A stretch of 64,000 bases of DNA from positions 1-64,000 of the IMG/VR virus record IMGVR_UViG_3300023174_000039; one strand, written 5' to 3'. Positions 29,082 through 45,012 of this stretch are shown here, in pieces. Within the stretch, counting starts at the first letter, position 1. Each line of letters begins with the position of its first letter. The position numbers were made by a program, and so were the translations under genes. Below the pieces are notes generated by a model. That model was not told the DNA's origin, made no database searches, and saw nothing but the letters and a program-made list of their open reading frames with translations.

Positions 29082-29347
29082 GCGAAGTAGTAGCAAGCGA
29101 AATTTGGGGTGAACTCAAACGTTTTGTAAACACCGTGGATCGTGCAGAAGCCGCAGAAACTGTGGTACAGATCTTGATGGACAATGATTCAGATGTTGAT
29201 GATATTCGTAGTGCTTTCAAAGGTGATTCAGATATCAAACGTGCGTTGACTGCATACCTTGACAATGACAAAGACTACATCGAAGAAGAAGATGCAGAAG
29301 AAGATGAAGACTTTGACGACTTTGACAAGGACGACTGGGAAAATTAA
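29078..29347 (+). CDS. Small protein with acidic C-terminal tail
   Basis: ATGA-coupled to uvsX; ends in a D/E run. Confidence 0.8.
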   Translation: MSEVVASEIWGELKRFVNTVDRAEAAETVVQILMDNDSDVDDIRSAFKGDSDIKRALTAYLDNDKDYIEEEDAEEDEDFDDFDKDDWEN

Positions 29348-30591
29348 TGTCCTTGACATATTTTCCAATCCGAACTGCAACAAGTTGTCAATTAAAATGG
29401 AATTGGACGGCATTGTACCTCAATGGCGGGTTCTCTCGAACTTGCCATCGTACTGCTGAAACACAATTAACTCCAGAAAATTTTAGTGATTTTCACAATA
29501 CTGAAGTTGTGTTAAGCGATCGTACAAGAATGTTGCAAGGCCTATGGCCAGAGAAAAGTTGTTCGTATTGTAAAAATATTGAAGAAGCAGGCGGAACAAG
29601 TGATCGATTGCGACAAATTGACAATCCAAATTTATCTCCGCCTGAACTTGTTGATGATCCTTCTGCAATTGTAGTAAGTCCCACGGTACTAGAAGTATTT
29701 TTTAATAATACATGCAACCTAGGATGCTTGTACTGCACACCCTCATTGAGTTCTGTGATAAACACTGAAAATCACAAGTTTGGTAACTTTGATCAAAACG
29801 GTGTTTCGTTGACTCCTGTAGACATACACTATAAGGATCTATCTCCACATTTTTGGCAATGGTTTCCTGACGGCTTTCCCAAGCTCAAACGATTTGGAGT
29901 GCTAGGTGGTGAACCGTTCTATCAAAAAGAGTTTGAAAAACTTTTAGACATGATAGAGCAACATCCCAATCCCAATTGCGAACTCAACATCATAACCAAT
30001 CTTATGGTATCTCCGGACAGGTTAAGTATGTTTGTTGAACGTTTTAAAAAACTGTTGCTGACAAAAAAAATAAAACGAGTTGATATAACGTGCAGTATAG
30101 ATTGCTGGGGACCACAACAAGAGTATGTGAGATGGGGAATTGATCTTGAGCAATGGCAACAGAATTTTGAATCTCTAATCAAGCACAAATGGTTGTACAT
30201 TAGTATAAATCAAACTATAACAGCGTTGACTATCAAGACCATGCCTGATTTGTTGCTAAAGTTAAAAGAATGGAACGCTATACGCCCAGTACATCATCAC
30301 TTTAGTGGCCCGTCGCCGACTCCGAGCTACTTTGATGCTGGCATATTAGGCGGCGACGAGTTTAAACATGACTTTGATCAAATATTATCCTTGATGCCAC
30401 AATCTACTGATGAAGATAAAATAACATACAACTACATGTTGGGTATAGCAAATGGCATCGTACAGTCCCGGATTAATCCTGATGAGATTAACAAATTGTT
30501 AACTTATCTTGACGAGAAGGATCGCCGACGTGGCACAGATTGGAAAATATTATTTCCGTGGTTAGTGGAGTATAAAAAATATGTGGTATAG
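29347..30591 (+). CDS. Radical SAM protein, twitch-type
   Basis: CQLKW..TCH..CSYC, CNLGCLYC and GGEPF. Confidence 0.9.
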   Translation: MSLTYFPIRTATSCQLKWNWTALYLNGGFSRTCHRTAETQLTPENFSDFHNTEVVLSDRTRMLQGLWPEKSCSYCKNIEEAGGTSDRLRQIDNPNLSPPELVDDPSAIVVSPTVLEVFFNNTCNLGCLYCTPSLSSVINTENHKFGNFDQNGVSLTPVDIHYKDLSPHFWQWFPDGFPKLKRFGVLGGEPFYQKEFEKLLDMIEQHPNPNCELNIITNLMVSPDRLSMFVERFKKLLLTKKIKRVDITCSIDCWGPQQEYVRWGIDLEQWQQNFESLIKHKWLYISINQTITALTIKTMPDLLLKLKEWNAIRPVHHHFSGPSPTPSYFDAGILGGDEFKHDFDQILSLMPQSTDEDKITYNYMLGIANGIVQSRINPDEINKLLTYLDEKDRRRGTDWKILFPWLVEYKKYVV

Positions 30592-31041: not shown

Positions 31042-32142
31042 ATGAGTTATCTATTTACAAGTGAAAGTGTGTCTGAAGGACACCCAGATAAAATAGCAGA
31101 CGCCATTAGCGATGCTGTATTAGATCTAGTTATGACCAAACAAGACACAGCATTGCGATGCGCATGCGAGACATTGGTTACTACCAATCGTGTCATAGTT
31201 GCAGGAGAATACAAAGGCATTTTACACGCCGAGGAAGTTGATTCTGCAGTTCGCAAAGTTATCAAAGATGTTGGGTACAAACAAGCAGGATTTAATTGGC
31301 AAACAGTAGAGATTACAAATTTATTGCATGGGCAAAGTGCTGACATTGCATTAGGAACTGACACCTTTGGCGCCGGAGATCAAGGATTGATGTTTGGATA
31401 TGCTTGCAATGAAACTGATGCACATATGCCTAGTGCAATTTATTGGAGCCACAAGATTGTAGAACAGCTTGCCAAGCTACGCAAAAACAATGACTTGCCT
31501 TGGTTAGGTCCAGATGCTAAGAGTCAGGTCACATTTGAATACAATGACGATGGCTCTCCTAAACGTATTGCTAAAGTGGTATGCTCTACGCAACATCACG
31601 AGTCAGTGGATATTGAGCAAGTTCAAATGTCTGTTGAAAGTGTGATTCGCAGTGTCTTACCGGAGAAATATGTTGACAATGCTACTGAGTTTTTTATTAA
31701 TCCTACTGGCCGTTTTGTTATTGGTGGCCCTGATGGTGATACAGGTCTCACCGGTCGTAAGATTATTGTTGATACTTATGGTGGGTATAGCCCTCATGGG
31801 GGCGGGGCTTTCTCAGGGAAAGATCCCACAAAGGTGGACCGTAGTGCCGCTTACATGATGCGCTATCTTGCCAAGAACATTGTAGCAAGTGGTCGAGCAG
31901 ATTGGGCTACAGTACAGATTAGTTATGCTATTGGTCTAGCACAGCCCATGAGCTTCTATGTAGAAACCGCAGACTTACAACAGAGTCGCGATCTAACCAA
32001 ATGGTTACAAGACAATGTTGATTTAACACCTCGTGGTATTATTGAACGTTTTAATTTGTTTAGGCCAATCTATAGTACAACAACCAATTACGGACACTTT
32101 GGCAAAGATTATTTGCCCTGGGAAAAAACAGACCTGTTCTAA
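31042..32142 (+). CDS. metK: S-adenosylmethionine synthetase
   Basis: FTSESVSEGHPDK, GAGDQG and GGGAFSGKD signatures. Confidence 0.98.
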   Translation: MSYLFTSESVSEGHPDKIADAISDAVLDLVMTKQDTALRCACETLVTTNRVIVAGEYKGILHAEEVDSAVRKVIKDVGYKQAGFNWQTVEITNLLHGQSADIALGTDTFGAGDQGLMFGYACNETDAHMPSAIYWSHKIVEQLAKLRKNNDLPWLGPDAKSQVTFEYNDDGSPKRIAKVVCSTQHHESVDIEQVQMSVESVIRSVLPEKYVDNATEFFINPTGRFVIGGPDGDTGLTGRKIIVDTYGGYSPHGGGAFSGKDPTKVDRSAAYMMRYLAKNIVASGRADWATVQISYAIGLAQPMSFYVETADLQQSRDLTKWLQDNVDLTPRGIIERFNLFRPIYSTTTNYGHFGKDYLPWEKTDLF

Positions 32143-32162
32143 TACTGTGTTTAAATAGCAGT

Positions 32163-32918
32163 ATGAAAATTGTACTTGTAACAGGTGGGTTCGATCCCAT
32201 ACACTCCGGACACCTTGCCTACTTTCAGGCAGCAAAACAACTAGGTGATAAACTCATAGTTGGACTTAACTCAGATGAATGGCTTACTCGTAAAAAGGGC
32301 AAGCCATTCATGCCCATGAGTGAACGCTTTGCACTAGTTAGTGCATTGAGCATTGTGGATCAAGTGATTGTTTACAATGACAACGATAACTCCAGTTGTG
32401 ATGCAATTCAACTGATAAAAACACGTTACCCTAACGATACTATTGTGTTTGCCAACGGGGGCGATCGCACCAAGGATAACATTCCAGAAATGGTATTTGA
32501 CGATGTGGAGTTTGTGTTTGGTGTTGGTGGCGAAAACAAGATGAACTCTAGTTCCTGGATATTGGAAGATTGGAAGAAACCCAAGACCTCACGTGCCTGG
32601 GGGTATTATCGTGTGTTACACGAAGTTGGGCCAAACACCAAACTCAAAGAACTTACTGTGGCACCCAAGACCTGCTTGAGTATGCAACGACACGATCGAC
32701 GTGCTGAGTTTTGGTTTGTGGCAGAAGGTGAAGCCGCAGTGTATACCCTGGACAATTCCAGCGATCACGATCTTGTTGGTCATTTCAATGTGCATGACTA
32801 TATCTGGATCAAGAAAAATCAATGGCACATGCTGTGCAATGAAACTGACCAACCTCTTAAACTGATTGAAATTCAGTATGGTGAAGATTGTGTGGAAGAG
32901 GATATTGAGCGTCGATGA
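32163..32918 (+). CDS. Cytidylyltransferase (HIGH family) fused to a mannose-6-phosphate-isomerase-type cupin
   Basis: TGGFDPIHSGH and FANGGDR; C-terminal RAWGYY, LSMQRH..RAEFW, H and IEIQYG; TAAATA 32152-32157. Confidence 0.9.
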   Translation: MKIVLVTGGFDPIHSGHLAYFQAAKQLGDKLIVGLNSDEWLTRKKGKPFMPMSERFALVSALSIVDQVIVYNDNDNSSCDAIQLIKTRYPNDTIVFANGGDRTKDNIPEMVFDDVEFVFGVGGENKMNSSSWILEDWKKPKTSRAWGYYRVLHEVGPNTKLKELTVAPKTCLSMQRHDRRAEFWFVAEGEAAVYTLDNSSDHDLVGHFNVHDYIWIKKNQWHMLCNETDQPLKLIEIQYGEDCVEEDIERR

Positions 32919-33604
32919 AAGCCATACCAGTTTACGTTGGGTATGATCCTAGAGAAGCAATTGCTTTTCATACCTGTGCTAACTCAATCATACGACATGC
33001 ATCAAAGCCTGTGGCTATTATTCCTGTGGCGCTGAACCTGTTTCGTGACTACGAAGAAACACATACAGATGGCAGCAATCACTTTATCTACACACGATTT
33101 CTTGTGCCACACCTGCAAGAATACACAGGATGGGCAATATTCATTGACGGCGACATGATTGTGCGTGATGACATTGTTAAACTATGGGAGTTGAAAAATC
33201 CCTACAATGACGTGATGGTAGTCAAGCACGATTACAAAACACGCATGCCTGTAAAATATTTAGGAGCACGAAATGAAGACTATCCTCGAAAAAATTGGTC
33301 TAGTGTTATTCTGTGGAATTGTAATAGCTTTCCTAACAGACAGCTTACTCCTGAGTTTGTCCAGCGAGCCACGGGCAGTGAGCTCCACCGCTTCTCGTGG
33401 CTAGATGATGCCCGCATAGGTGAACTGCCACCAGAGTGGAATTGGCTGCCAGATGAATATGGTGTCAACAAGGACGCTAAACTATTGCACTACACTCTGG
33501 GCACACCGTGCTTTCAAGAGTTTGCTGACACACCACAAGGTGATGAATGGCACAGAGAACGCATACTTACTGAATATTGTTTACAGAGGTCAATAGATGA
33601 ATGA
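32915..33604 (+). CDS. Glycosyltransferase (GT-A, GT8-like)
   Basis: VGYDPRE, FIYTRFLVP, FIDGDM (DxD), YPRKNWSS and LHYTLGTP. Confidence 0.85.
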   Translation: MKAIPVYVGYDPREAIAFHTCANSIIRHASKPVAIIPVALNLFRDYEETHTDGSNHFIYTRFLVPHLQEYTGWAIFIDGDMIVRDDIVKLWELKNPYNDVMVVKHDYKTRMPVKYLGARNEDYPRKNWSSVILWNCNSFPNRQLTPEFVQRATGSELHRFSWLDDARIGELPPEWNWLPDEYGVNKDAKLLHYTLGTPCFQEFADTPQGDEWHRERILTEYCLQRSIDE

Positions 33605-34592
33605 CTGGGAACTCGAAGACGAAACCAATTACGTTCCACCCCTGCCGCCACCGCCGCCGCCGCCGCATGTGCTTGATCAAACTGTACCAGAAATAAGATA
33701 TTTGTTTGATAATATATTAAAATATCGTGTGGACCCTGCAGGATTGTACTATGGAATTACGTTAGAAGTATTACACCAGCAGTTGGCTGCTATACCAGTC
33801 AATCAAGTTGTGGCACTAGATAGTGAATATAGATACGAAAGAAAAGGTCATATGTACGACCCACTACTACAAAGTTTTGTTCAAGGTGCAGGTGGACAAC
33901 TCAGCACCTGGGAAAAAGAAGAACACTCAATGACCCCGGCTGTGTTGCGCGGCATTACCAAACGCAAGCAAATGGAAGGCTGTCGAGCAGTTGGTAGAGA
34001 TTTTTACTACATGGACACTGGTTACTTTGGCAATAGCAAGCGAAAGTTATATCATCGCATTACAAAGAACGATGTACAGTATTTTGGTCCAGTTATAGAA
34101 CGTCCTAGAGATAGACTAGATGCAACAGGTGTAAAGTTTAAAAAGTTTACGTCAGGCACAAACATACTGTTGGCACCACCTAGCCAAAAATTATTAAACC
34201 TATATGATATCAATTTAGAAGAGTGGCTTGAAACCACACAAGAAACTTTAAGAAAACACACAAACCGTCCAATTGTAGTACGCACTAAACAAGGGCGTAG
34301 TACCAGAGTCAATACCGATACCATGGAAATGGCACTGGATCAAGATGTACATTGCTTGGTAACATATTCAAGTATTGCTGCCACAGAAGCACTATTGTTG
34401 GGTAAACCAGCAATCACACTAGGGCCAAACGCTGCCTCACCGTTATGCAGAAAAAATATTGCCGATATTGAAAATCCTTACATACCGAGCCTCGACGAAG
34501 TTGATGCATGGGCACGTAGCCTAGCCTATTGCCAATTTACCGAAGTAGAAATGCGAAACGGTACTGCTTGGCGTATTCTAAATGAGCGTTGA
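33597..34592 (+). CDS. Capsule-biosynthesis (KpsS/KpsC-like GT-B) protein, paralog 1
   Basis: YYMDTGY, RPIVVRTK, LVTYSSIAATEALLLGKP and LAYCQFT..E. Confidence 0.6.
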   Translation: MNDWELEDETNYVPPLPPPPPPPHVLDQTVPEIRYLFDNILKYRVDPAGLYYGITLEVLHQQLAAIPVNQVVALDSEYRYERKGHMYDPLLQSFVQGAGGQLSTWEKEEHSMTPAVLRGITKRKQMEGCRAVGRDFYYMDTGYFGNSKRKLYHRITKNDVQYFGPVIERPRDRLDATGVKFKKFTSGTNILLAPPSQKLLNLYDINLEEWLETTQETLRKHTNRPIVVRTKQGRSTRVNTDTMEMALDQDVHCLVTYSSIAATEALLLGKPAITLGPNAASPLCRKNIADIENPYIPSLDEVDAWARSLAYCQFTEVEMRNGTAWRILNER

Positions 34593-35511
34593 TGTTGTTG
34601 TTTATGTCAGTAGTGTAGCAAATCCTCGAAAACACGCAAGGAAAATTGCCTGCCTAGAAAGTTTTGCCGAAGGTGTTAAAAATACCGGGCATCGAGTTCA
34701 TGTGGAATGGGATTTTAAGTATCGTCCCAGCAGACTGGCAGTGATGTTGGGTTGGGCAACAACCAACACAGGCGGTCGTAATATCACTTTGCGAAAAGAA
34801 ATAATTGCCGAACAGCAACGTCGTGGATTTAACACCATGTGCATTGATGCCAGTTGTTGGAAGTATCTTGATGACTCAGGTACCTATTTGCGTTATAGCC
34901 TGGGCGGTCCGTTTTACGATCGTGCTGAGTATGCAAATAAAAATAGTAGCCCAGAGAAGTGGACAGAAATTAGTCAACGACTAAACATACATCTGCAACC
35001 TGTAAAAAATAACAATAATGGGTATATTTTGATTTGTATGCAACGTGATGGCGGCTTTGCTATGAAGACATTGAGTCCCGTGGCCTGGCTAGAAGATAAA
35101 ATTAAAACTATTCGTCAATATACAAAAAGACAAATTGTTGTGAGACCACATCCTGGTGCATACCTAATGAAAGATTTTTCACACATACGTCAATTGAATA
35201 CTAGTGTAATTGATCCTGCGCATAGTAAACTGCTAGATAATTTAATCGATGCGCATTCAGTAGTATTGTTCAACAGTTCAGCCAGTGTGGCTGCTGTGTG
35301 CGCAGGCGTTCCAGTGTTTGCAGATGATGCCAGTTGTGTTAGTTGGGCAGTAGCCAACCGAGATATATCACGTATTGAATCTCCGGAAATATTTGATCGG
35401 CAGCAATGGATTCAAGATTTATCAGCGGCCCATTGGAGTGATGCCGATGCTTGCCAAGGCCTTGTGTACCAAAAGTTTTTGCCTTATTTGACTTCAACTA
35501 CCACATCGTAA
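34582..35511 (+). CDS. Capsule-biosynthesis (KpsS/KpsC-like GT-B) protein, paralog 2
   Basis: ILICMQ, IVVRPHP and FNSSASVAAVCAGVP. Confidence 0.6.
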   Translation: MSVDVVVYVSSVANPRKHARKIACLESFAEGVKNTGHRVHVEWDFKYRPSRLAVMLGWATTNTGGRNITLRKEIIAEQQRRGFNTMCIDASCWKYLDDSGTYLRYSLGGPFYDRAEYANKNSSPEKWTEISQRLNIHLQPVKNNNNGYILICMQRDGGFAMKTLSPVAWLEDKIKTIRQYTKRQIVVRPHPGAYLMKDFSHIRQLNTSVIDPAHSKLLDNLIDAHSVVLFNSSASVAAVCAGVPVFADDASCVSWAVANRDISRIESPEIFDRQQWIQDLSAAHWSDADACQGLVYQKFLPYLTSTTTS

Positions 35512-36041
35512 TTGTGTCCTACAATGTCGGACCACTTGTGACTTTTGTCAACCACACTTATATCTTCTTTGACTATAGTAAGTTGCATAACCTTTAGTAT
35601 GCGATCTCTCCACCATTCGGGAGTCTCTACAATTAGATGAGCATTACGTCCATCGGGCAAGTGCTTTTTAGCTGGATAACAGGCAATTCTAAACCAACCA
35701 GCTTTTTGTATTTTACCACGTATCAAGGTCAACGTTTGGTCAAGGTATGCTGGCTCAATATGCTCAAACACATCCGCACTCACAACAACATCAAAATTGC
35801 GTTTGGGCATTTGATTATGATCAGTATTGCCGGGGTCGTACCCTTCCACACGCATAGCAGGATATAGTTCTTGTATACTTGCTATTAATGCCCCGTGGCC
35901 ACAGCCGTAGTCTAATAAACTTGCAGGCCGGTATTGGTCAATAAATGGTTTTACATTTTTTAAAATCTTACTGCCTCTAACAAATTGACCACGCCCATGC
36001 ATGGTTGCCAACTGTTTTTGATAATTTGGATCTATAATCAT
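35484..36041 (-). CDS. Class I SAM-dependent methyltransferase
   Basis: LLDYGCGHG, GYDPG and DVFEHIEP; start at MIIDPNY. Confidence 0.88.
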   Translation of the reverse strand: MIIDPNYQKQLATMHGRGQFVRGSKILKNVKPFIDQYRPASLLDYGCGHGALIASIQELYPAMRVEGYDPGNTDHNQMPKRNFDVVVSADVFEHIEPAYLDQTLTLIRGKIQKAGWFRIACYPAKKHLPDGRNAHLIVETPEWWRDRILKVMQLTIVKEDISVVDKSHKWSDIVGHNYDVVVEVK

Positions 36042-36712
36042 CTGTGATTTACCTCTACATATTTGTACTTGCCAGTCCATGTTGCAGGAACATCGGACCA
36101 CTTGCCTGTGAGTTGATCATCTAACCATCCAGGATAGTACTCGCGATCTTTAAACCACCAAAACAAATCACCACCTGTCCAGTCTTGGTAGTAACTACGA
36201 AAGAATTCTCTAGTGCGTGGTTTACAAAAATATGCAGGATCATACATGGTCTTTTTACTCTTGGCTTCACGTTGAAAATTCAATCCAATAAAGCAAAACT
36301 TACTGGCATAACTTTCCATCAACTCTCTCACCCAAGTCATGTCATCATCTGGTATGCTGTTTAATACCTGAGTACAAATTACTCCGTCAAACTTGGTTCC
36401 TCTCGGAGGCAACTGATCAAATTCAGCAACGCAAGGATCGTAGCAGTATACCTTGACTCCTAGATACTCGTCAAACGTTCTCCAGTCGCTTTCGGGTATG
36501 CCCACACTGCCTGTTTGGCTGTAGGGAAGTTTTTCTTTGTATTGTAATCCCTTACCACACCCGTAATCAAGTATGGTCTTTGCACCATAATGATCCACTA
36601 GGTCTTTGATCTTCTTTTGATATTTTACAACATCGTACCCGGCCCAGTTTTTATTGCTTTCTTGAAAATTGGTGCCTAGCCGAACTGATTGCGTATAATA
36701 AGAACTCACCAT
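36038..36712 (-). CDS. Class I SAM-dependent methyltransferase
   Basis: ILDYGCGKG, CYDP and FDGVICTQVL. Confidence 0.85.
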   Translation of the reverse strand: MVSSYYTQSVRLGTNFQESNKNWAGYDVVKYQKKIKDLVDHYGAKTILDYGCGKGLQYKEKLPYSQTGSVGIPESDWRTFDEYLGVKVYCYDPCVAEFDQLPPRGTKFDGVICTQVLNSIPDDDMTWVRELMESYASKFCFIGLNFQREAKSKKTMYDPAYFCKPRTREFFRSYYQDWTGGDLFWWFKDREYYPGWLDDQLTGKWSDVPATWTGKYKYVEVNHR

Positions 36713-37353
36713 CCCATAATCCAGTCATCTTTAACTTGATCTAGTTTGCGCATGCCAAAGGATTCTAGTAATCCAATGGCTGCAAACTGTCCATAGTCTT
36801 TTGAATACATATCGTGTGGCTTTTGCTCCACTACCACAACTGGGCGCCATTGTCGAATTGTTTGCTCAGCACCTTGTATCACACGATATTCAAATCCTTC
36901 GCAGTCCATTTTGATATAGTCTACATTGTCAATGTACAAGTTATCTAGTTTGACCACAGTGGTATCACCAGATCCAATGCTGGTAGGATCAATATGCGTG
37001 TGTCCTGTATTACCAGCAGTTATGTTCATACGTGCTGTGGTATCCTGATCACCTAAGGCCATGGGGCTGATAAAAAAGTTTTTGCCTGTGACATTTTTAT
37101 GCAAGCATTCTCTAAACATTGGTACAGGCTCAAACGCAATCACACGTTCAAACTTTGACACAAGTGAACGACTCCATAAGCCTACATTGGCACCAATGTC
37201 TATGCCAGTTCTAAACTGTTTGACATAGGTCAAACTCTTGTTGCGTACCTGATACTGATATTCAGCAGGTCCACCTTTACTGATACTCTTGTTGAGCATT
37301 TGTGGGAAGTGTGTTTCCGTATCTGGAAACCACCATCCGTGGCTTTCATACAT
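36706..37353 (-). CDS. FkbM-family methyltransferase
   Basis: IDIGANVG, AFEP and IKMDCEGFE. Confidence 0.92.
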   Translation of the reverse strand: MYESHGWWFPDTETHFPQMLNKSISKGGPAEYQYQVRNKSLTYVKQFRTGIDIGANVGLWSRSLVSKFERVIAFEPVPMFRECLHKNVTGKNFFISPMALGDQDTTARMNITAGNTGHTHIDPTSIGSGDTTVVKLDNLYIDNVDYIKMDCEGFEYRVIQGAEQTIRQWRPVVVVEQKPHDMYSKDYGQFAAIGLLESFGMRKLDQVKDDWIMGW

Positions 37354-38149
37354 TGTAGGTCTCCTTGAGTATGCGTGTGGCAACTCCGTTTTTTAACTCG
37401 TCGTTATGGAACTGTCCATACGCAAGATGATGTGCCCAAGCATGTACTTGATCTTGGTCAGCATAAGTGGGGGTGTCTATTTTGGCTAAGTCTGTGTCGG
37501 CTACAGGCATGGCCGCGTTACAAGGTGCTAGAACAAACGCTGGCACGCCTGATAAAATACTTTCTGTGGCAGCAATTGAGTTAAAGGTAACCACAGCATG
37601 TACATCATCTAGTGCAGATTCAATGTTGTGTTTGACCCTGGCCCGCCTATCAGGATTGCGTTGCCGTATTTCCACCGGACGATCAGTGTGTCGTTTTATA
37701 GTAGTCATAGTTTGTGCAATCCATTGCTCAAGATCAATGCCGTAAAATATACAAGGCTTTTCATCTGGCGCCGCAATTAAAATTTTACTGCCTGTGCGCC
37801 TCCAAGGCTGTATGTTGATTCTTAATCGCTCCCAGCGATCAGCAGGGCGTGACACAATTTTATCATGCTGTAAGTTGTTGAATACAATACGATGATAGTA
37901 CTTCCATCCATTGGGATTGGCACTACTGGCACGATTGCCTACATAGCCAGAATCCATGTACAAAAATGGTCTTTGATCCTGCCAACATTGTTTGATAATC
38001 TTGTGCTTCATTATGCCACGTACTACAATTGTATTTTGACTGGATTCGTATTGCCAAGTTTCAAGTGGGGTAGACGTTGACCCTGACCCATGAGCCAACA
38101 TTTCCATGTACTCATCCTGATTGTTCTTGCTTAAAAATATCCAGTTCAT
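37346..38149 (-). CDS. Capsule-biosynthesis (KpsS/KpsC-like GT-B) protein, paralog 3
   Basis: YMDSGY, RPVEIRQR, VVTFNSIAATESILSGVP and LAYGQF; clearly similar to 33597-34592. Confidence 0.6.
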   Translation of the reverse strand: MNWIFLSKNNQDEYMEMLAHGSGSTSTPLETWQYESSQNTIVVRGIMKHKIIKQCWQDQRPFLYMDSGYVGNRASSANPNGWKYYHRIVFNNLQHDKIVSRPADRWERLRINIQPWRRTGSKILIAAPDEKPCIFYGIDLEQWIAQTMTTIKRHTDRPVEIRQRNPDRRARVKHNIESALDDVHAVVTFNSIAATESILSGVPAFVLAPCNAAMPVADTDLAKIDTPTYADQDQVHAWAHHLAYGQFHNDELKNGVATRILKETYNV

Positions 38150-38949
38150 TGCCAGTATGCTTCTGTTCTTGTGACTTTAAGGTCCACACGCTTGCTACGT
38201 CCAAGGTCTTTTCTTGCACCCTTAAGATGATCTAACCATGCTCCCCACTCACAGTTGATTAAGGGATGTCCTTCGCCGGTGATCAAATGACTTGACCAGT
38301 CAAGTTCTATCAACGTACTATTACGACGTACGGCATCAAACACAAATGAGTCGTGCCACTCGTCCAGTTTAAAAATACCATTCTCGGCATCATCGTAGGC
38401 CTGCTGAAACTTGCTTAAAAACAAACAAGTAGCAGGGCTTGTTAAATTCATAGCATACAATCCGCATTCGGTATACTTTTGTCTACGTCCCAGGAAGCAA
38501 AGGTCCATTCTTGGGGGACACATTTTTTGTAAATCAGCAAGCCTGATCGGGCTATGGCATATGGTATCAGCATCCATCCACAACAACCAATCAGTTGATG
38601 TAGTTTTTGCACAGTGAAATACGGCATAAACTTTGTGAGCAAATCGAATTGCATCCCACTTGAAGCCTTTACCGGCATCCTTGCGTTGAGACCGTGCTGG
38701 ATCAGCACTTACATCACCATTTGCTTTGGGCACACCGCGCCACTTGTGTTTGAATGCAACCAGTTCTGGACTAGCAACCGCAAGGTCATGCACAATCAAG
38801 TTAGGTGCCGATTCACTTACCGCACAAGCTTCGGCATACACAACCAATTGAACCTCTTGCGGCCAATTCTGCAAAAAGGTTTGTATCATGCGTCGGCCAT
38901 ACTTCTCATAACCGCCGGCGTTAAAAGTGGTACATACAGTATATTTCAT
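38146..38949 (-). CDS. Glycosyltransferase (GT-A, nucleotide-diphospho-sugar transferase)
   Basis: RFAHKVYA, WMDADT (DxD), WHDSFVFD and DHLKG. Confidence 0.75.
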   Translation of the reverse strand: MKYTVCTTFNAGGYEKYGRRMIQTFLQNWPQEVQLVVYAEACAVSESAPNLIVHDLAVASPELVAFKHKWRGVPKANGDVSADPARSQRKDAGKGFKWDAIRFAHKVYAVFHCAKTTSTDWLLWMDADTICHSPIRLADLQKMCPPRMDLCFLGRRQKYTECGLYAMNLTSPATCLFLSKFQQAYDDAENGIFKLDEWHDSFVFDAVRRNSTLIELDWSSHLITGEGHPLINCEWGAWLDHLKGARKDLGRSKRVDLKVTRTEAYWQ

Positions 38950-38960
38950 CAAGAATACTT

Positions 38961-39803
38961 ATGATTAAAAACATAGCATATTATCCTTTACAACGTGCTC
39001 TAAATGGCGGCCCTCCTATGAATGCCATGCTTACTGCTCTGCACAACGCTGGCATAGAAACACACGATCGTGGACTAGATTCTGACGCTGTGCTCATATG
39101 GTCAGCACTATGGTCTGGTAGAATGGCAGCCAACCAAGCAGTATATAGACATTATAGGGCACAAGGCAAGCCAGTAATCATCATTGACATTGGGGCACTA
39201 AATCGTGGCACAACATGGAAGGTTGCAGTGAACAACATCAATGCCAATGGTTATTATGGGCACTTAGACAACCTAGATTGGGATCGTCCCCGGAAGATGA
39301 ATCTAGTACTTGGCACTCCCACAAATACCAAATCTCACATTGTGATTGCGGCACAGCACACGCAAAGCGAACAATTGGCAGGAGTTGATCTTACTATGTG
39401 GATACATGCTCAAATACAATTGATAAAAAACAACACGGATAGACCCATACACATTAGACCACATCCCAGATGCAGTCTTAACACTACCAGTTTTGCTGGA
39501 GTCAAAATTGAGTCGCCCAGTAGAGTATCCAACACATACGACAGTTTTGATTTGGGATTGAATTGTCATGCCATTGTAAATTACAACTCGGGACCGGGCA
39601 TACAAGCAGCCATAGCAGGTGTTCGTCCCATAGTTGAAATGAGTAGTTTGGCATATCCTGTTGGGGTTGGCATTGCTGATATAGAAAAACCTTACACAAC
39701 TGACCGTGAATTGTGGCTCGCACAAATTAGTCATACTGAATACACAGTACCTGAATTAGAACAAGGCTTATGGCTAAAAAGAATAGAATCGGCACTGGCA
39801 TAA
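38961..39803 (+). CDS. Capsule-biosynthesis (KpsS/KpsC-like GT-B) protein, paralog 4
   Basis: IVIAAQ, IHIRPHP and VNYNSGPGIQAAIAG. Confidence 0.6.
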   Translation: MIKNIAYYPLQRALNGGPPMNAMLTALHNAGIETHDRGLDSDAVLIWSALWSGRMAANQAVYRHYRAQGKPVIIIDIGALNRGTTWKVAVNNINANGYYGHLDNLDWDRPRKMNLVLGTPTNTKSHIVIAAQHTQSEQLAGVDLTMWIHAQIQLIKNNTDRPIHIRPHPRCSLNTTSFAGVKIESPSRVSNTYDSFDLGLNCHAIVNYNSGPGIQAAIAGVRPIVEMSSLAYPVGVGIADIEKPYTTDRELWLAQISHTEYTVPELEQGLWLKRIESALA

Positions 39804-40507
39804 CTGATTGTGCCTGTGTGATACACAGCACCGGCTATGACTGGACCTATGTTGAACGACTGTACAACATGCTGGATCGTAACTTGCCCGGTGACATACG
39901 CTTTCATGTTTATACCGAACATGATCGTAGTGTGCCTCCTTACATGATCAAACACATACTAGAAGACTGGCCAGGCATTGCTGGTCCAAAGAAGTCATGG
40001 TGGCACAAGCTACAGGTGTTTAATCCTGAACATTATGAAGGCAATTTGCTTTACTTTGATCTTGACACAGTGATTGTTCGTGACGTAGGTTGGATTACTC
40101 AACTGGATCCCAATTACCTCTGGGGCATTAGAGATTTTAGGCACTTACAAAATCCCAGACTTAACACATTGAACTCCAGTGTAATGTGGTGGAATGTCAA
40201 ACAGTTTGGATGGGTATGGGACAAGTTTAAAACAGATGACATTGACAAAGTGTCAAGACAGTATCCTGGAGACCAAGATTACCTGTATGCAACACTTGGT
40301 CACAACAAAGTTCGGTATTTTGATGATGCACAATTAAAAAGTTGGCGTTGGCAGTGTTTTGATGGCGGATATGACTTTCAGTACAGAAAGCACAGAGCAC
40401 CGGGACAAGGTACCTTTATTGATGGTAATACTTCTGTTTTAGTATTTCATGGCAACCCTAAACCCCATAAAATTAACGATAAAGTAGTACAAGACCTTTG
40501 GAAGTAA
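39770..40507 (+). CDS. Glycosyltransferase (GT-A)
   Basis: YVERLYNM, WWHKLQVF, YFDLD, NSSVM, GDQ and VFHGNPKP. Confidence 0.85.
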   Translation: MAKKNRIGTGITDCACVIHSTGYDWTYVERLYNMLDRNLPGDIRFHVYTEHDRSVPPYMIKHILEDWPGIAGPKKSWWHKLQVFNPEHYEGNLLYFDLDTVIVRDVGWITQLDPNYLWGIRDFRHLQNPRLNTLNSSVMWWNVKQFGWVWDKFKTDDIDKVSRQYPGDQDYLYATLGHNKVRYFDDAQLKSWRWQCFDGGYDFQYRKHRAPGQGTFIDGNTSVLVFHGNPKPHKINDKVVQDLWK

Positions 40508-40511
40508 ACGG

Positions 40512-40540
40512 TTGACCAATAATTCCCCATTTGCTACAAT
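40512..40540 (+). promoter_or_regulatory. Sigma70-type early promoter
   Basis: TTGACC-N17-TACAAT with extended -10 TG. Confidence 0.8.
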
Positions 40541-40814: not shown

Positions 40815-40843
40815 TTGACCATTAAATCTCAAACTGCTATAAT
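40815..40843 (+). promoter_or_regulatory. Sigma70-type early promoter
   Basis: TTGACC-N17-TATAAT with extended -10 TG. Confidence 0.85.
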
Positions 40844-40873: not shown

Positions 40874-41269
40874 ATGCAAAACTGGACTGACAAGATCATT
40901 CATTGGAATCAACTGCCCGGCACAGAAGTCAAACGTCTGTTAGCTACCTGGGGCAAGTCTCCAGTAGAGATTGCCAAGTATGACCGTAAGCACGGCTTTA
41001 CAAGCTCTGCCCCAAAAGCACAAGTGCCAGTCAAAGCAGAAAAACCAGTACCGGCTGTGACAAAACCCGTTGCTAAAAAAGCAGTGGCCAAACCAGCCGC
41101 TCGCCAAAAGCACACAGGTGCCGACGGTGAAATCAAGTTTGTAGCACACAGAAATCTCTATGTGGGATTCCTGGGCGGCCGGGTTGTAGTAACCAAACGT
41201 ACAGTAGATGCCTGCCGTGCTGTGTTGCTCGAACAGTTTGGAATCGAAGGCGTGCAGGTTGACGCCTAA
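40874..41269 (+). CDS. Basic early hypothetical protein with K/A/P-rich linker
   Basis: AAGGAG RBS; two small domains joined by a histone-like linker. Confidence 0.75.
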   Translation: MQNWTDKIIHWNQLPGTEVKRLLATWGKSPVEIAKYDRKHGFTSSAPKAQVPVKAEKPVPAVTKPVAKKAVAKPAARQKHTGADGEIKFVAHRNLYVGFLGGRVVVTKRTVDACRAVLLEQFGIEGVQVDA

Positions 41270-41287
41270 TTCGATATCTGCTATAAT
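41259..41287 (+). promoter_or_regulatory. Sigma70-type early promoter
   Basis: TTGACG-N17-TATAAT with extended -10 TG. Confidence 0.85.
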
Positions 41288-42572: not shown

Positions 42573-43700
42573 ATGACTTTTTGCTATTCCCCTTGGTCCA
42601 ACATTGACATTAGTCCTCAAGGTGACCTCACGCCTTGTTGCAAATTTCAAATGTCCAAGTACAATGAGTCGTTTAATGTGCAAACGCAAACCTTGCCTGA
42701 GTATTTTGGCAGTGCCTTTTTGGCAGAAATCAAGCAAGAATTTGCACAAGGACAATGGCCACGTGGATGTGAACGGTGTCGTATTGAGGAAGAGAACAAC
42801 ATTGCCAGCAAGAGACAATTGGATTATGAACGCTGGCAACAACATTACCAACTGTATGATCTTGCCAGCAGTAAGTGTATCACCGCCAGCATTGCATTTG
42901 GAAACACCTGTAATCTAAAATGCATAACCTGCAGTCCTTACAGTAGCAGTAAATGGCATCAAGAACATCTAAAAATACACAATGTTGATATTGGACCTGT
43001 TAAATTTTACAGGAGTGATTTTGTAGAAAAGTTTATAGACCAGTCACCAGATGTTGTTCATTTGGACATACCCGGAGGCGAACCTTTCCTATCTGGTGTG
43101 CAAGAACAAAAACGCTTGTTGAATCATTATATAACAACAGGACAGGCCAAACATATTAGTTTACATTACACTACCAACGTAACGCTATTTCCTGATCAAG
43201 AGTGGTGGGATATTTGGCAGCATTTTGAGAACGTCGACATCCAACTCAGCATAGACGGAGTGGGCAACAGATATGAGTACATTAGATATCCGGCCAAATG
43301 GGCAGAAGTTGTTGATAACACTGCTCGGTACTTAGAACGGCACCAAGGCAATATCCAGCTTAGTGTAAGTCATACCGTGAGTGCCTACAACATTTATTAT
43401 CTTGATGAATTTTTTACATGGTGCAAACACATGGGATTGCCTGATCCGTGGCTGGGCCGAGTTCATAATCCCATGCACATGCGACCCACAGTATGGCCTA
43501 CTGCTGTCAGAAATCACATTGCTGAACATTTACAATCCAGCAGTTACACACATGTGCGCACCTGGGCACAACTGTTACAAAGCCAAGATGACAGCGAGAA
43601 GTTTGATAAATTTAAGACTTATCTGCTACAGCATGATCAATATAGAGGATTAAACTTTGCAGAAACGTTTCAGGAACTATCGGAGTTTTTAAATGTCTAG
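42573..43700 (+). CDS. Radical SAM protein, twitch-type
   Basis: CYSPW..PCC..CERC, CNLKCITC and GGEPF. Confidence 0.9.
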   Translation: MTFCYSPWSNIDISPQGDLTPCCKFQMSKYNESFNVQTQTLPEYFGSAFLAEIKQEFAQGQWPRGCERCRIEEENNIASKRQLDYERWQQHYQLYDLASSKCITASIAFGNTCNLKCITCSPYSSSKWHQEHLKIHNVDIGPVKFYRSDFVEKFIDQSPDVVHLDIPGGEPFLSGVQEQKRLLNHYITTGQAKHISLHYTTNVTLFPDQEWWDIWQHFENVDIQLSIDGVGNRYEYIRYPAKWAEVVDNTARYLERHQGNIQLSVSHTVSAYNIYYLDEFFTWCKHMGLPDPWLGRVHNPMHMRPTVWPTAVRNHIAEHLQSSSYTHVRTWAQLLQSQDDSEKFDKFKTYLLQHDQYRGLNFAETFQELSEFLNV

Positions 43701-45012
43701 TAGAAAAGACTATCCAATATATCAGGTGCTTGAAGAAAAGAGCAAGTTTTTTTGTCCTGCCAAGTGGACAGAGTTGTTCTTGTATCTCAATCATGGAACC
43801 AGTAATAGTTGTCATCATCCTATTCCACACAACATACCACAAGAGTTGCTGAGCAATCCGGCAGTGTTACACAACACCCCGCACAAGTTAAAAATGCAAC
43901 AGCTCATGATAGACGGAGTCAGGCCAGACGAATGTCACATGTGTTGGCATATAGAAGATGCAGATCCTGACGCTGTGAGTGACCGCATTACCAAAAGTCA
44001 GCACTGGCAAGATAGAATTGCAGGACTTGCAGTTGATCCAGAATATGTGCCGCCATTCATTGAAGTGGTATTTGACAACTATTGTAACCTAACCTGTAGC
44101 TATTGCGACTCCGGGCAAAGCTCATCCTGGGCTGCCAAAGTACACAAACAACCGTTGCACTTGCTCACCGACTATCGTGAGTTGTATTCCAAAATTCATA
44201 TTGCACCCGGAACAACCAAGCAACAGTATCTTGATGCCTGGCTAACCTGGTGGCCAACCATACGTGATCAAGTACAGGTACTCAAAATCAGTGGCGGCGA
44301 GCCATTGATGAGCAAAAACTTTTGGCGCTTTGTTGATGAACTTGGAACAGCACCCAACTTGTCTATTGCCATCAACAGTAATTTTTCTGTGGACCACGAG
44401 TTGGTAAAACGCTTTGCAGCCTATGCACCAAACTTTCGTAAAGTAACAATATCTGCTAGCATTGATGCAACTGAAAGCATTGCAGAATACGCCAGGCAAG
44501 GGCTAAACTACCAGCAATTTTTACACAATGTGCATTATTGGTGCTCAAGTACTCCGGACAATTGTTTCCTCAAACTACAAAGCACAGTCAACGTATTAAA
44601 TGTATGGGGGCTAACTGATAAGTTTGAATTAAACGCACACCTGCGACAACTATATCCTGCTCGTGTGTTGGATTTTTATAGCACAATTGTGCGAGCACCA
44701 GAGTTTCAGTCAATCTTGATACTGCCCAATAATGTCAGACACCAACTTGGTATCCAGATTCAAACTTGGATTAAGCACAATAGTCAGCTGTTGTCATCTG
44801 CGGAAAAGGTACTGGCAAACAAAACTGCAAGCTACCTGGTAAACAACCCGGAACCCATGCACAAGTTTGAGCAACGCCAATTAGAGCTTGACTTTGTGAC
44901 ATTTTTACTGTATTATAATCAAACAAGCAAACTACAATATCAACATGTATACCCTAAAGAATTCTTAGAATGGATAGAAACAATTGAAACAATGCACAAT
45001 ACAAATACGTGA
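43693..45012 (+). CDS. Radical SAM protein, twitch-type
   Basis: CPAKW..SCHH..CHMC, CNLTCSYC and GGEPL. Confidence 0.9.
   Translation: MSSRKDYPIYQVLEEKSKFFCPAKWTELFLYLNHGTSNSCHHPIPHNIPQELLSNPAVLHNTPHKLKMQQLMIDGVRPDECHMCWHIEDADPDAVSDRITKSQHWQDRIAGLAVDPEYVPPFIEVVFDNYCNLTCSYCDSGQSSSWAAKVHKQPLHLLTDYRELYSKIHIAPGTTKQQYLDAWLTWWPTIRDQVQVLKISGGEPLMSKNFWRFVDELGTAPNLSIAINSNFSVDHELVKRFAAYAPNFRKVTISASIDATESIAEYARQGLNYQQFLHNVHYWCSSTPDNCFLKLQSTVNVLNVWGLTDKFELNAHLRQLYPARVLDFYSTIVRAPEFQSILILPNNVRHQLGIQIQTWIKHNSQLLSSAEKVLANKTASYLVNNPEPMHKFEQRQLELDFVTFLLYYNQTSKLQYQHVYPKEFLEWIETIETMHNTNT
44888..44920 (+). repeat. Second copy of the 42530 promoter sequence, embedded in the radical SAM coding region
   Basis: TTGACTTTGTGAC-N5-TACTGTAT is shared with 42530-42555. 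Confidence 0.7.

What the first reader, a model, noticed from the sequence alone, without database searches (positions are those of the whole stretch)
31042..40507. Late glycan-building cluster: MetK, CTP-transferase-cupin, three GT-A, four KpsS-like paralogs and three methyltransferases
Twelve contiguous genes could supply SAM, activate a sugar or polyol phosphate, polymerise it and O-methylate it. TAAATA at 32152 points to late expression, which fits virion glycosylation better than DNA modification. No hydroxymethylase or other base-modification gene is visible here. Four diverged KpsS/KpsC-like genes in a phage is unusual, since those families transfer Kdo from CMP-Kdo in capsule synthesis. 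An alternative is remodelling of the host surface. The cluster may act with the rSAM set.
Basis: partly seen in the sequence, partly recalled or inferred. Interest (0 to 1): 0.7.

Follow-up and report, generated by a model that had tools for sequence, protein, structure and literature searches.

The report
Late glycan-building gene cluster, jumbo phage
A 331-kb freshwater T4-like phage carries a late-expressed block of seven sugar-adding enzymes and three methylating enzymes, four of them from a large, unnamed, mostly viral enzyme family shaped like bacterial capsule Kdo transferases but without their catalytic aspartate; it most likely decorates the phage particle with a methylated sugar chain, though the target is not proven.

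Summary
In detail: twelve tightly packed genes lie at 31042-40507. They are MetK, a nucleotidyltransferase-cupin fusion, three GT-A glycosyltransferases, four paralogs and three SAM methyltransferases.

TAAATA is this phage's late-promoter motif. It precedes portal, baseplate and tail-fibre genes. It sits 5 nt before g02, at a position conserved in relatives, and a variant precedes the minus-strand operon.

No hydroxymethylase, TET or C5 DNA methylase exists in the genome, which argues against DNA glycosylation. The genome also encodes ADP-heptose, GalE and amino-sugar genes elsewhere.

Related modules occur in Pelagibacter phage Mosig and, next to tail-fibre genes, in Caulobacter jumbo phages. 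Virion glycosylation is the best reading (about 0.45). Remodelling of host LPS remains a serious rival.

The parts
31042..32142 (+). g01, S-adenosylmethionine synthetase (MetK). Adjacent SAM supply, but upstream of the cluster's late promoter and not conserved with the cluster.
   Evidence: Pfam N, M and C domains. TIGR01034 at 477 bits, above the cut-off. Present in L026 and L027. Absent in L002, L028 and L031, where a methyltransferase or uvsY abuts g02.
32152..32157 (+). TAAATA late-type promoter core, 5 nt before the g02 ATG. This spacing predicts a leaderless or near-leaderless transcript for g02-g05.
   Evidence: The motif is enriched about 15-19 fold upstream of genes. It precedes portal, baseplate wedge, tail-fibre-like and virion structural genes. 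TAAATA-N5-ATG is conserved before g02 orthologues in L002, L024, L026, L027 and L028.
32163..32918 (+). g02, an HxGH nucleotidyltransferase (RfaE domain II / TagD-like) fused to a type II PMI-like cupin. Probably activates or isomerises a sugar phosphate; the sugar is unknown.
   Evidence: PF01467 and PF01050 both score above their cut-offs. TIGR02199 scores 78 bits against a cut-off of 181.5. The HSGH motif is at residues 14-17, and the cupin reads H-D-R where the H-x-H metal motif is expected. The protein is 78-96% identical across many metagenomic phage contigs.
32915..33604 (+). g03, a GT8-family GT-A glycosyltransferase (retaining type).
   Evidence: PF01501 scores 30.6 bits against a cut-off of 24.3. 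phrog_28018 at 1e-36. D78-G-D80. The most conserved glycosyltransferase of the cluster, 80-94% identical in relatives.
33597..34592 (+). g04, a KpsC/WbbB-fold paralog of the P/K subclass (P128 and K164 in g09 numbering), with an N-terminal extension of about 87 residues that contains a polyproline run.
   Evidence: 40% identical to g09. Motif columns. Sequence.
34582..35511 (+). g05, a KpsC/WbbB-fold paralog of the Q/H subclass. It keeps Gln and R-P-H-P, but has Gly where the nucleophile Asp would be.
   Evidence: blastp E about 1e-12 to g09 and g11. Motifs.
35484..36101 (-). g06, a class I SAM methyltransferase. The true start is probably at 36041, giving 185 aa.
   Evidence: PF13489 scores 39 bits. 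phrog_24759. The orthologue in L002 is 185 aa.
36038..36712 (-). g07, a class I SAM methyltransferase and distant paralog of g06.
   Evidence: Weak PF13489 match, 23.0 bits against a cut-off of 27. phrog_24759 at 1.9e-11. blastp to g06 at 5e-7.
36706..37383 (-). g08, an FkbM-family methyltransferase.
   Evidence: PF05050 scores 64.6 bits. TIGR01444 scores 95.4 bits against a cut-off of 37.7. Counterparts in Mosig and CcrBL9.
37346..38149 (-). g09, a KpsC/WbbB-fold paralog of the P/K-like subclass (P128, R164). This is the modelled representative.
38146..38949 (-). g10, a GT-A glycosyltransferase (retaining GT6/GT8-like fold) and first gene of the minus-strand operon. A TAAGTA variant of the late motif lies 6 nt before its ATG.
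   Evidence: Model pLDDT 85.6. Foldseek matches alpha-1,3-GalT, the ABO transferases and glycogenin at E about 1e-7 to 1e-5. D-A-D motif. Orthologues carry a perfect TAAATA 5-6 nt before the ATG.
38961..39803 (+). g11, a KpsC/WbbB-fold paralog of the Q/H subclass (Gln and R-P-H-P, no Asp at Q+4). The most divergent gene among relatives.
   Evidence: 34-64% identical in relatives.
39770..40507 (+). g12, a GT-A-like glycosyltransferase.
   Evidence: phrog_1962 'glycosyltransferase' at 1.7e-21. ESM-atlas neighbours are GT8 / Nucleotid_trans clusters. D97-L-D99.

Best explanation
This is a late-expressed, entirely cytoplasmic glycan assembly line of a T4-like freshwater jumbo phage.

Proposed steps:
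1. Sugar donors. Some come from the host. Others come from phage enzymes: g02 inside the cluster, and, elsewhere in the genome, a split HldE kinase and adenylyltransferase with HldD (ADP-heptose), GalE, and a 4,6-dehydratase-like enzyme with an aminotransferase.
2. Chain building. Seven glycosyltransferases (three retaining-type GT-A and four enzymes with the rare KpsC/WbbB architecture) each add one residue or linkage, building a hetero-oligosaccharide.
3. Methylation. Three SAM methyltransferases then O-methylate it.

The four paralogs fall into two subclasses. The Q/H class (g05, g11) keeps the CMP-binding R-x-H-P motif that Kdo transferases share with sialyltransferases, so it may use a CMP-ulosonic acid such as host CMP-Kdo. 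Without the Asp nucleophile it would probably work by single displacement. The P/K class (g04, g09) replaces Gln and His with Pro and Lys/Arg, so it may use a different donor.

The acceptor is most likely one or more virion proteins made at the same time.

Shown: gene families, folds, motif status, late-type promoters, conserved synteny, and the absence of DNA hydroxymethylation genes. Inferred: donors, order of action, methylation of sugars, and the acceptor.
For: - Gene families.
- Folds: g09 resembles KpsC/WbbB/KrkA. g10 is GT-A.
- A 103-sequence profile of the family hits WbbB by sequence (E 0.002) and aligns R-x-H-P and N-S-x4-E-A.
- Natural fusions of GT8 with this domain tie the family to glycan synthesis (atlas row 4).
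- No predicted membrane segment in any of the 12 proteins, and no flippase or polyprenyl-phosphate transferase in the cluster.
- Late motif: genome-wide enrichment before structural genes. It is conserved as TAAATA-N5-ATG before g02 orthologues and as TAAATA or TAAGTA before g10 orthologues.
- The core genes g02-g05 and g08-g12 keep their synteny down to about 39-64% identity, while methyltransferase number and extra GT8 copies vary. The glycosyltransferases evolve faster than the flanking replication genes.
- Similar modules occur in Pelagibacter phage Mosig and, directly after tail-fibre genes, in Caulobacter phage CcrBL9.
- The same fold occurs four times in Tetraselmis virus 1, an algal giant virus. 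Its host has no LPS (own knowledge).
- Sugar-nucleotide genes elsewhere in the genome.
- No ThyA-like hydroxymethylase, TET/JBP or C5 DNA methylase; ThyX is present.
Against: - There is no direct evidence for any acceptor.
- The cluster sits among replication and recombination genes (gp32, uvsX, uvsY, uvsW-like helicase), not among structural genes.
- Heptose, Gal, GT8 and Kdo-transferase-like enzymes are also the toolkit of LPS core synthesis. That process likewise uses soluble enzymes at the inner face of the membrane.
- No promoter was recognised for g11-g12.
- The late assignment rests on a motif association, not on transcript data. No RNA run holds this region.
- Donor assignments are inferred from motifs only.
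Confidence: 0.45

Rival explanations
1. The cluster remodels the host envelope. The enzymes would extend or alter the LPS core, or a capsule-like glycolipid, at the cytoplasmic face of the inner membrane. The host's own MsbA/Lpt or ABC exporters would then carry the product out. The changed surface would block superinfection, or stop progeny from adsorbing to debris.
For: - GT8 is the family of LPS core alpha-glycosyltransferases. KpsC, KpsS and WbbB act on lipid-linked capsule or O-antigen acceptors without membrane-spanning segments.
- The genome encodes the ADP-L,D-heptose pathway and GalE, both typical of core sugars.
- The pelagimyophage study (PMC7029224) proposed this role for GT8 and rfaE genes.
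- Methyltransferase number and glycosyltransferase content vary between relatives, in the manner of O-antigen loci.
Against: - Late-type promoters drive at least nine of the twelve genes. Exclusion functions are expected early.
- There is little time after late expression for newly made LPS to replace the existing surface.
- The same fold family occurs in an algal giant virus.
- In Caulobacter phages the module lies within the tail-fibre and lysis late region.
Confidence: 0.25
2. The cluster hypermodifies phage DNA. The glycosyltransferases would attach sugars, possibly heptose or Kdo and then methylated, to phage DNA bases. This would resemble T4 glucosylation or the metagenomic 5hmC-glycan pathways.
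For: - The cluster lies between uvsX/uvsY and a uvsW-like helicase.
- A preprint (10.1101/2023.12.21.572611) shows phage glycosyltransferases placing Kdo and heptose on 5hmC. In the heptose case a CTP_transf-like enzyme is required.
Against: - No ThyA-type hydroxymethylase, TET/JBP dioxygenase or C5 DNA methylase in a record that is 95% complete. ThyX is present.
- Seven glycosyltransferases and three methyltransferases appear to exceed what any described DNA glycan needs (own knowledge).
- The DNA glycosyltransferases described in that work are T4 beta-GT-like GT-B or TarP/JGT-like GT-A, not KpsC-like.
- Late promoters fit poorly with modification that accompanies replication.
- A FolE-QueD-radical-SAM set elsewhere hints at a different, 7-deazaguanine type of DNA modification.
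Confidence: 0.1
3. The cluster makes a soluble product. This could be a free cytoplasmic polymethylated oligosaccharide or polysaccharide, or a glycosylated small molecule or peptide. The neighbouring radical-SAM/SPASM enzymes might take part.
For: - All the enzymes are soluble, and methyltransferases are prominent.
- Three radical-SAM paralogs flank the cluster, and one of them has a late motif.
Against: - Only the radical-SAM gene between uvsX and uvsY keeps its place in L002. A counterpart of 42573-43700 appears in one relative (L028, 59% identity), and only weak radical-SAM matches appear elsewhere.
- No precursor-peptide gene or hydrolase typical of such pathways was seen.
- It is unclear how a lytic phage would benefit.
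Confidence: 0.1

Closest known systems
Retaining beta-Kdo transferases: KpsC (GT107), WbbB N-terminal domain (GT99), KrkA (GT140), and KpsS
   Same: - A profile of the family aligns to WbbB's R-A-H-P and N-S-S-x3-E-A motifs.
- g05 and g11 keep Gln128 and R-P-H-P.
- Like KpsC's two modules, the paralogs occur in multiple copies, which suggests different linkages.
   Different: - No Asp at Q+4 in any of the four. In the family that column reads S35, G14 and D10 of 103 sequences.
- g04 and g09 also replace Gln with Pro and His with Lys or Arg.
- Pfam Capsule_synth does not match.
- No KdsB or other CMP-sugar synthetase is encoded.
- Sequence identity is 8-14%.
- The proteins are shorter, 245-330 aa.
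- Members are mostly viral.
Mycobacteriophage virion glycosylation clusters (Freeman et al. 2023, PMC10527164; seen here only as a citation in PMC12619734, not read)
   Same: Phage-encoded soluble glycosyltransferases that decorate capsid and tail-tube proteins in the cytoplasm.
   Different: As far as I recall, those clusters are small, lie next to structural genes, and belong to phages of Actinobacteria. The present cluster has seven glycosyltransferases and three methyltransferases, lies in the replication region, and includes KpsC-fold enzymes.
'LPS-related' auxiliary genes of pelagimyophages and cyanomyophages (PMC7029224)
   Same: GT8 and rfaE-like genes in aquatic T4-like phages. Pelagibacter phage Mosig holds counterparts of g08, g10, g03, g09 (twice) and g12.
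   Different: In that study the KpsC-fold genes were left as 'hypothetical', and the genes were read as modifiers of the host O-chain. Here the cluster is larger, carries late promoters, and is fixed next to uvsY.
Capsid glycosylation machinery of chloroviruses and other giant viruses (own knowledge)
   Same: Virus-encoded cytoplasmic glycosyltransferases and sugar methyltransferases that build methylated glycans on capsid proteins. Tetraselmis virus 1 has four proteins with the same fold as g09.
   Different: Those are eukaryotic viruses. No sequence-level orthology was shown, and their acceptors and glycans are unrelated.
Phage DNA glycosylation (T4 alpha/beta-GT; 5hmC-glycan pathways, 10.1101/2023.12.21.572611)
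   Same: Glycosyltransferases near replication genes. A CTP_transf-type nucleotidyltransferase is used for heptose activation.
   Different: The genome has no source of hydroxymethyl-pyrimidine. The glycosyltransferase folds differ, and there are many more enzymes here.

Membership tests
Retaining beta-Kdo transferases (GT99/GT107/GT140; Pfam Capsule_synth PF05159) | Modified GT-B architecture shared by WbbB, KpsC and KrkA | tested here: met
   [not shown]
Retaining beta-Kdo transferases (GT99/GT107/GT140; Pfam Capsule_synth PF05159) | QXXXD motif: a nucleophile Asp and a Gln that binds the Kdo carboxylate (PMC12887879, PMC9587256) | tested here: not met
   g09 reads P-D-E-K-P, g04 reads P-S-Q-K-L, g05 reads Q-R-D-G-G and g11 reads Q-H-T-Q-S. 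Only about 10 of 103 family members have Asp at Q+4. This rests on a sequence alignment; no residue-level structural superposition was available.
Retaining beta-Kdo transferases (GT99/GT107/GT140; Pfam Capsule_synth PF05159) | (K/R)XHP CMP-binding motif | tested here: inconclusive
   Met in g05 and g11 (R-P-H-P). Not met in g04 (R-T-K-Q) or g09 (R-Q-R-N). The motif aligns to WbbB R-A-H-P.
Retaining beta-Kdo transferases (GT99/GT107/GT140; Pfam Capsule_synth PF05159) | Match to the family's sequence model | tested here: not met
   PF05159 has no match at E<=10 anywhere in the genome. The only Pfam hit is a weak one to DUF6716. PDB sequence hits to WbbB are marginal, at E 0.002-1.
Retaining beta-Kdo transferases (GT99/GT107/GT140; Pfam Capsule_synth PF05159) | Transfer of Kdo from CMP-beta-Kdo with retention of configuration | not testable with these tools
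   Needs an enzyme assay. The phage encodes no KdsB, so the donor would have to come from the host.
GT8 / retaining GT-A glycosyltransferases (g03, g10, g12) | GT-A fold with a D-x-D metal and nucleotide motif | tested here: met
   g03 matches PF01501 above the cut-off. The g10 model matches GT6 and GT8 structures. g12 matches phrog_1962. D-x-D motifs. The fold of g12 was not modelled.
HldE domain II (heptose-1-phosphate adenylyltransferase), for g02 | Score above the TIGR02199 equivalog cut-off | tested here: not met
   78.3 bits against a cut-off of 181.5. This shows superfamily membership only; the HSGH motif is. A closer RfaE-II homologue lies at 229010-229405, at 116.7 bits, also below the cut-off.
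Type II phosphomannose isomerase cupin, for the g02 C-terminal domain | PF01050 match and the cupin H-x-H...E metal motif | tested here: inconclusive
   PF01050 scores 69.5 bits against a cut-off of 23.6. However, the motif reads H-D-R...E, so isomerase activity is uncertain.
Phage DNA glycosylation systems | A source of 5-hydroxymethyl-pyrimidine: a ThyA-like hydroxymethylase, or a C5 methyltransferase with TET | tested here: not met
   PF00303 gives only an 11.9-bit fragment with an internal stop. PF12851 and PF00145 give no match.
T4-type late transcription unit | A late-promoter core upstream, shared with structural genes | tested here: met
   TAAATA precedes g02, and TAAGTA (TAAATA in orthologues) precedes g10. 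The same motif precedes portal, baseplate and tail-fibre genes. No transcript data were available.

The most novel reading that the evidence does not exclude
The four paralogs would represent a large, mostly viral glycosyltransferase family, with at least 4386 clusters at 50% identity. It keeps the rare architecture of retaining Kdo transferases but has lost their Asp nucleophile and split into two donor-site subclasses. Together with GT-A enzymes and FkbM-type methyltransferases it would form a mobile cassette. With this cassette, abundant aquatic phages (freshwater jumbo phages, pelagimyophages, Caulobacter jumbo phages) coat their virions with a methylated glycan containing heptose and ulosonic acid. 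That would be a bacterial-virus counterpart of giant-virus capsid glycosylation.
Probability: 0.3. Interest if true: 0.78.

Novelty: new variant of a known kind. Interest (0 to 1): 0.6.

Why it matters
If the reading is right, virion glycosylation, so far documented mainly in mycobacteriophages and giant viruses, would extend to abundant phages of freshwater and marine Gram-negative bacteria. The machinery would be far more elaborate than any described in phages.

The KpsC/WbbB/KrkA architecture has so far been tied to a double-displacement Kdo-transfer mechanism. A huge viral sister family without the nucleophile would be a natural experiment on how that scaffold changes mechanism and donor, and a candidate new CAZy family.

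Variation of the glycan between related phages would bear on host recognition, on phage-phage competition, and on how virus particles behave in lakes.

Tried and rejected
- Megablast of the cluster against GenBank phages gave no match.
The cellular distribution therefore rests only on AlphaFold DB and ESM-atlas hits.
- A profile of the Q/H subclass alone against PDB sequences gave only non-significant hits to WbbB (E 0.18) and KpsC (E 0.38). It was no better than the whole-family profile.
- The early PDB hits of the four-sequence profile to Photorhabdus lectins came from a repeat-like N-terminal stretch. I dismissed them.
- The 'moraphage' paper (PMC12619734) describes a different lineage.
- A search for RNA runs, meant to map transcript starts, found only DNA metagenomes.
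- The generic sigma-70 and terminator scan inside the cluster was no better than shuffled sequence.
- No residue-level structural superposition with KpsC or WbbB was possible with these tools. The equivalence of the general-base Glu and the exact position of the nucleophile remain at sequence-alignment level.
- Searches for GmhA (SIS_2), NeuB and KdsB in the genome were negative.

Full report
CONTEXT. The window is the first 64 kb of a 331,654-bp IMG/VR virus record estimated to be 95% complete. Near-identical DNA occurs in lake and other freshwater metagenomes from many studies. Its UvsX is 62-67% identical to those of the large myophages of Proteobacteria: Sinorhizobium Phosso, Vibrio 2.275.O, Agrobacterium Atu_ph07, Pectobacterium CBB and Cronobacter GAP32. 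The host is therefore probably Gram-negative. That is an inference.

The cluster sits in a replication and recombination region. The order is gp32-like SSB, UvsX, a small ORF, a radical-SAM gene, UvsY, [the cluster], two small genes, an AAA protein, two radical-SAM/SPASM genes, and a UvsW-like helicase.

OBSERVATION. Twelve ORFs fill 31042-40507. They form three tightly overlapping blocks:
- g02-g05 on the plus strand.
- g10-g06 on the minus strand.
- g11-g12 on the plus strand.

g05 and g06 converge and overlap by 28 nt. g10 and g11 diverge, with about 11 nt between their starts.

Family assignments:
- MetK.
- Nucleotidyltransferase plus PMI-type cupin.
- GT8 (g03).
- Methyltransferases: g06 matches Methyltransf_23 above its cut-off. 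g07 matches it only below the cut-off, but also matches a methyltransferase PHROG and g06. g08 is FkbM.
- g12: a PHROG 'glycosyltransferase'.
- g10 had no family hit. An AlphaFold model (pLDDT 85.6) matches the retaining GT-A enzymes alpha-1,3-galactosyltransferase, the ABO transferases, glycogenin and XXYLT1.

All three GT-A candidates carry D-x-D after a hydrophobic strand, and none of the twelve proteins has a membrane-like segment.

g04, g05, g09 and g11 are paralogs. g04 and g09 are 40% identical; the other pairs have E 2e-12 to 4e-7. They are the only members of their family in the genome.

THE FOUR PARALOGS. A profile of the four finds 4386 cluster representatives at E<=1e-3 among 1.84 billion proteins. 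ESM-atlas clusters with this shape are 94-100% viral, and one carries Pfam Capsule_synth in 18% of its members.

By sequence, the family profile hits WbbB at E 0.002.

Membership, however, fails on the catalytic motif. The literature defines these enzymes by three features:
- QXXXD, in which the Asp forms the covalent Kdo adduct and the Gln binds the carboxylate.
- The (K/R)XHP CMP motif, shared with sialyltransferases.
- A general-base Glu.

In the alignment the Gln column reads Q53/P42 and the His column reads H51/K44. The Q+4 column reads S35, G14 and only D10.

g05 and g11 belong to a Q/H subclass: Gln, R-P-H-P and no Asp at Q+4. g04 and g09 belong to a P/K subclass: Pro, then a conserved Lys three residues on, and Lys or Arg in place of His. 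A minority of family members do keep a canonical QXXXD, which links the family to true Kdo transferases.

I infer that the Q/H enzymes may still use a CMP-activated ulosonic acid. Host CMP-Kdo is the obvious candidate, since the phage has no KdsB or NeuB. They would probably work without a covalent intermediate. The P/K enzymes may use another donor. Neither inference has been tested.

EXPRESSION. TAAATA is 15-19 fold enriched in the 60 nt upstream of genes. It lies within 45 nt of 67 starts. These include portal, baseplate wedge, a tail-fibre-like protein and several virion structural proteins.

A second promoter class, GGTTGACC-N17-TGCTATAAT, precedes small genes. Three of these lie immediately downstream of the cluster, with promoters at 40512, 40815 and 41259. 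TAAATA is thus the late class and the sigma-70-like motif the early class.

The g02 copy at 32152 lies 5 nt before the ATG. TAAATA-N5-ATG is conserved before g02 orthologues in five diverged relatives, even though the upstream gene differs between them. Before g10 the window has TAAGTA-N6-ATG, and orthologues carry either perfect TAAATA or TAAGTA at 4-6 nt. At least nine of the twelve genes are therefore probably late.

MetK lies upstream of the g02 promoter and is absent from several relatives. I treat it as an accessory neighbour.

CONSERVATION AND DISTRIBUTION. The core genes g02, g03, g04, g05, g08, g09, g10, g11 and g12 keep their order, next to uvsY, in relatives down to about 39-64% identity. 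Several things vary:
- The number of methyltransferases ranges from 1 to 3.
- An extra GT8 paralog and a 4.5-kb insert are present in some relatives.
- g05, g11 and g12 diverge much faster than the flanking UvsY, AAA and helicase genes.

This is the pattern expected of a structure under diversifying selection.

Pelagibacter phage Mosig carries counterparts of g08, g10, g03, g09 (twice) and g12, plus a sulfotransferase. Caulobacter phage CcrBL9 carries two g09-like genes, a g03-like gene and a methyltransferase directly after its tail-fibre genes and before the lysozyme gene. BFVD shows the fold in CcrColossus and four times in Tetraselmis virus 1.

THE REST OF THE GENOME. The following lie outside the window:
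- An RfaE domain II adenylyltransferase at 229010-229405.
- An RfaE domain I heptose-7-P kinase at 229347-230105.
- An HldD epimerase at 230332-231231.
- GalE, above its equivalog cut-off, at 202858-203808.
- A 4,6-dehydratase-like SDR with a DegT/PseC-type aminotransferase at 241067-243119.

The phage therefore invests widely in nucleotide sugars, which fits a complex heteroglycan.

There is no ThyA-like hydroxymethylase, TET/JBP or C5 DNA methylase, and ThyX is present. FolE, QueD and a small radical-SAM gene at 204-209 kb suggest a possible 7-deazaguanine pathway instead.

INTERPRETATION. That this is a glycan-building, methylating, late-expressed cluster is well supported; I put it at about 0.85. 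The acceptor is not shown.

In favour of virion proteins:
- The late promoters.
- The module's position after tail-fibre genes in the Caulobacter phages.
- The fold's presence in a giant virus of algae.
- The precedent of virus-encoded cytoplasmic glycosylation with methylated sugars.

In favour of host LPS remodelling:
- The heptose, Gal, GT8 and Kdo-transferase-like toolkit.
- LPS core synthesis likewise needs no membrane proteins.
- The earlier proposal for pelagimyophages.

DNA glycosylation is the weakest rival, because its entry chemistry is absent.

NOVELTY. Glycosyltransferase islands in aquatic T4-like phages are known. The literature I could search describes neither a KpsC/WbbB-fold family in phages nor its loss of the nucleophile. 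The relevant genes are annotated 'hypothetical' in Mosig and in the Caulobacter phages. I rate the finding a new variant of a known kind.

Noticed in passing
whole genome; in the window e.g. 32152, 24790, 42561, 51607, 20512: Late-type TAAATA motifs fall into two spacing classes. Of 170 copies, 39 are followed within 12 nt by an ATG that opens an ORF of at least 60 aa, with a sharp peak at 4-5 nt. This suggests leaderless late mRNAs, the portal gene among them. A second class lies 15-30 nt upstream with a Shine-Dalgarno sequence in between.
   Followed up: partly
window 40512-40540, 40815-40843, 41259-41287; also 3.9-4.5 kb and many sites outside the window: A strongly conserved early-type promoter, GGTTGACC-N17-TGCTATAATACT, precedes many small genes of 70-130 aa. 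Three lie directly downstream of the cluster.
   Followed up: partly
G000:C1:229010-231231 (loci L034, L038, L040): A split HldE (adenylyltransferase of 131 aa and kinase of 252 aa) and an HldD-like epimerase. [quoted passage not shown] GmhA (SIS_2) was not found.
   Followed up: partly
G000:C1:202858-210385 (locus L039): GalE, a DegT fragment, GTP cyclohydrolase I, a HIT protein, a PTPS/QueD-like protein, a weak GT2, a methyltransferase, a small radical-SAM protein and a third CTP_transf-like enzyme. Part of this may be a 7-deazaguanine pathway, and the rest a second sugar island.
   Followed up: partly
window 29347-30591, 42573-43700, 43693-45012; G000:C1:198919-200094: Four radical-SAM proteins, two of them with a SPASM match. 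The three in the window are paralogs. Only the one between uvsX and uvsY keeps its place in L002. One relative (L028) has a 59% identical counterpart of 42573-43700. Function unknown.
   Followed up: partly
window 33597-33860 (g04 residues 1-87): g04 has an N-terminal extension with a run of nine prolines in ten residues. Its paralog g09 lacks the extension. The g04 orthologue in L002 aligns over 330 residues, so it carries an extension too. It may be a docking or linker segment.
   Followed up: no
L033:532-1473: In one distant relative the UvsX homologue carries an intein (Hom_end_hint and Intein_splicing Pfam hits), and a SegE-like GIY-YIG gene lies nearby.
   Followed up: no
G000:C1:232620-233540: A phage ORF matches the TctC tripartite tricarboxylate transporter receptor family (60.7 bits). 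This is an unusual auxiliary gene.
   Followed up: no
window 38949-38961 and 35484-35511: The g10 and g11 starts diverge with only about 11 nt between them, so each promoter lies inside the other gene. g05 and g06 converge with a 28-nt overlap and no terminator.
   Followed up: partly
BFVD hits A0A2P0VP54, A0A2P0VNK4, A0A2P0VP74, A0A2P0VP72: Tetraselmis virus 1, an algal giant virus, has four proteins with the same fold as g09. Two of them are annotated as capsule polysaccharide biosynthesis proteins.
   Followed up: no
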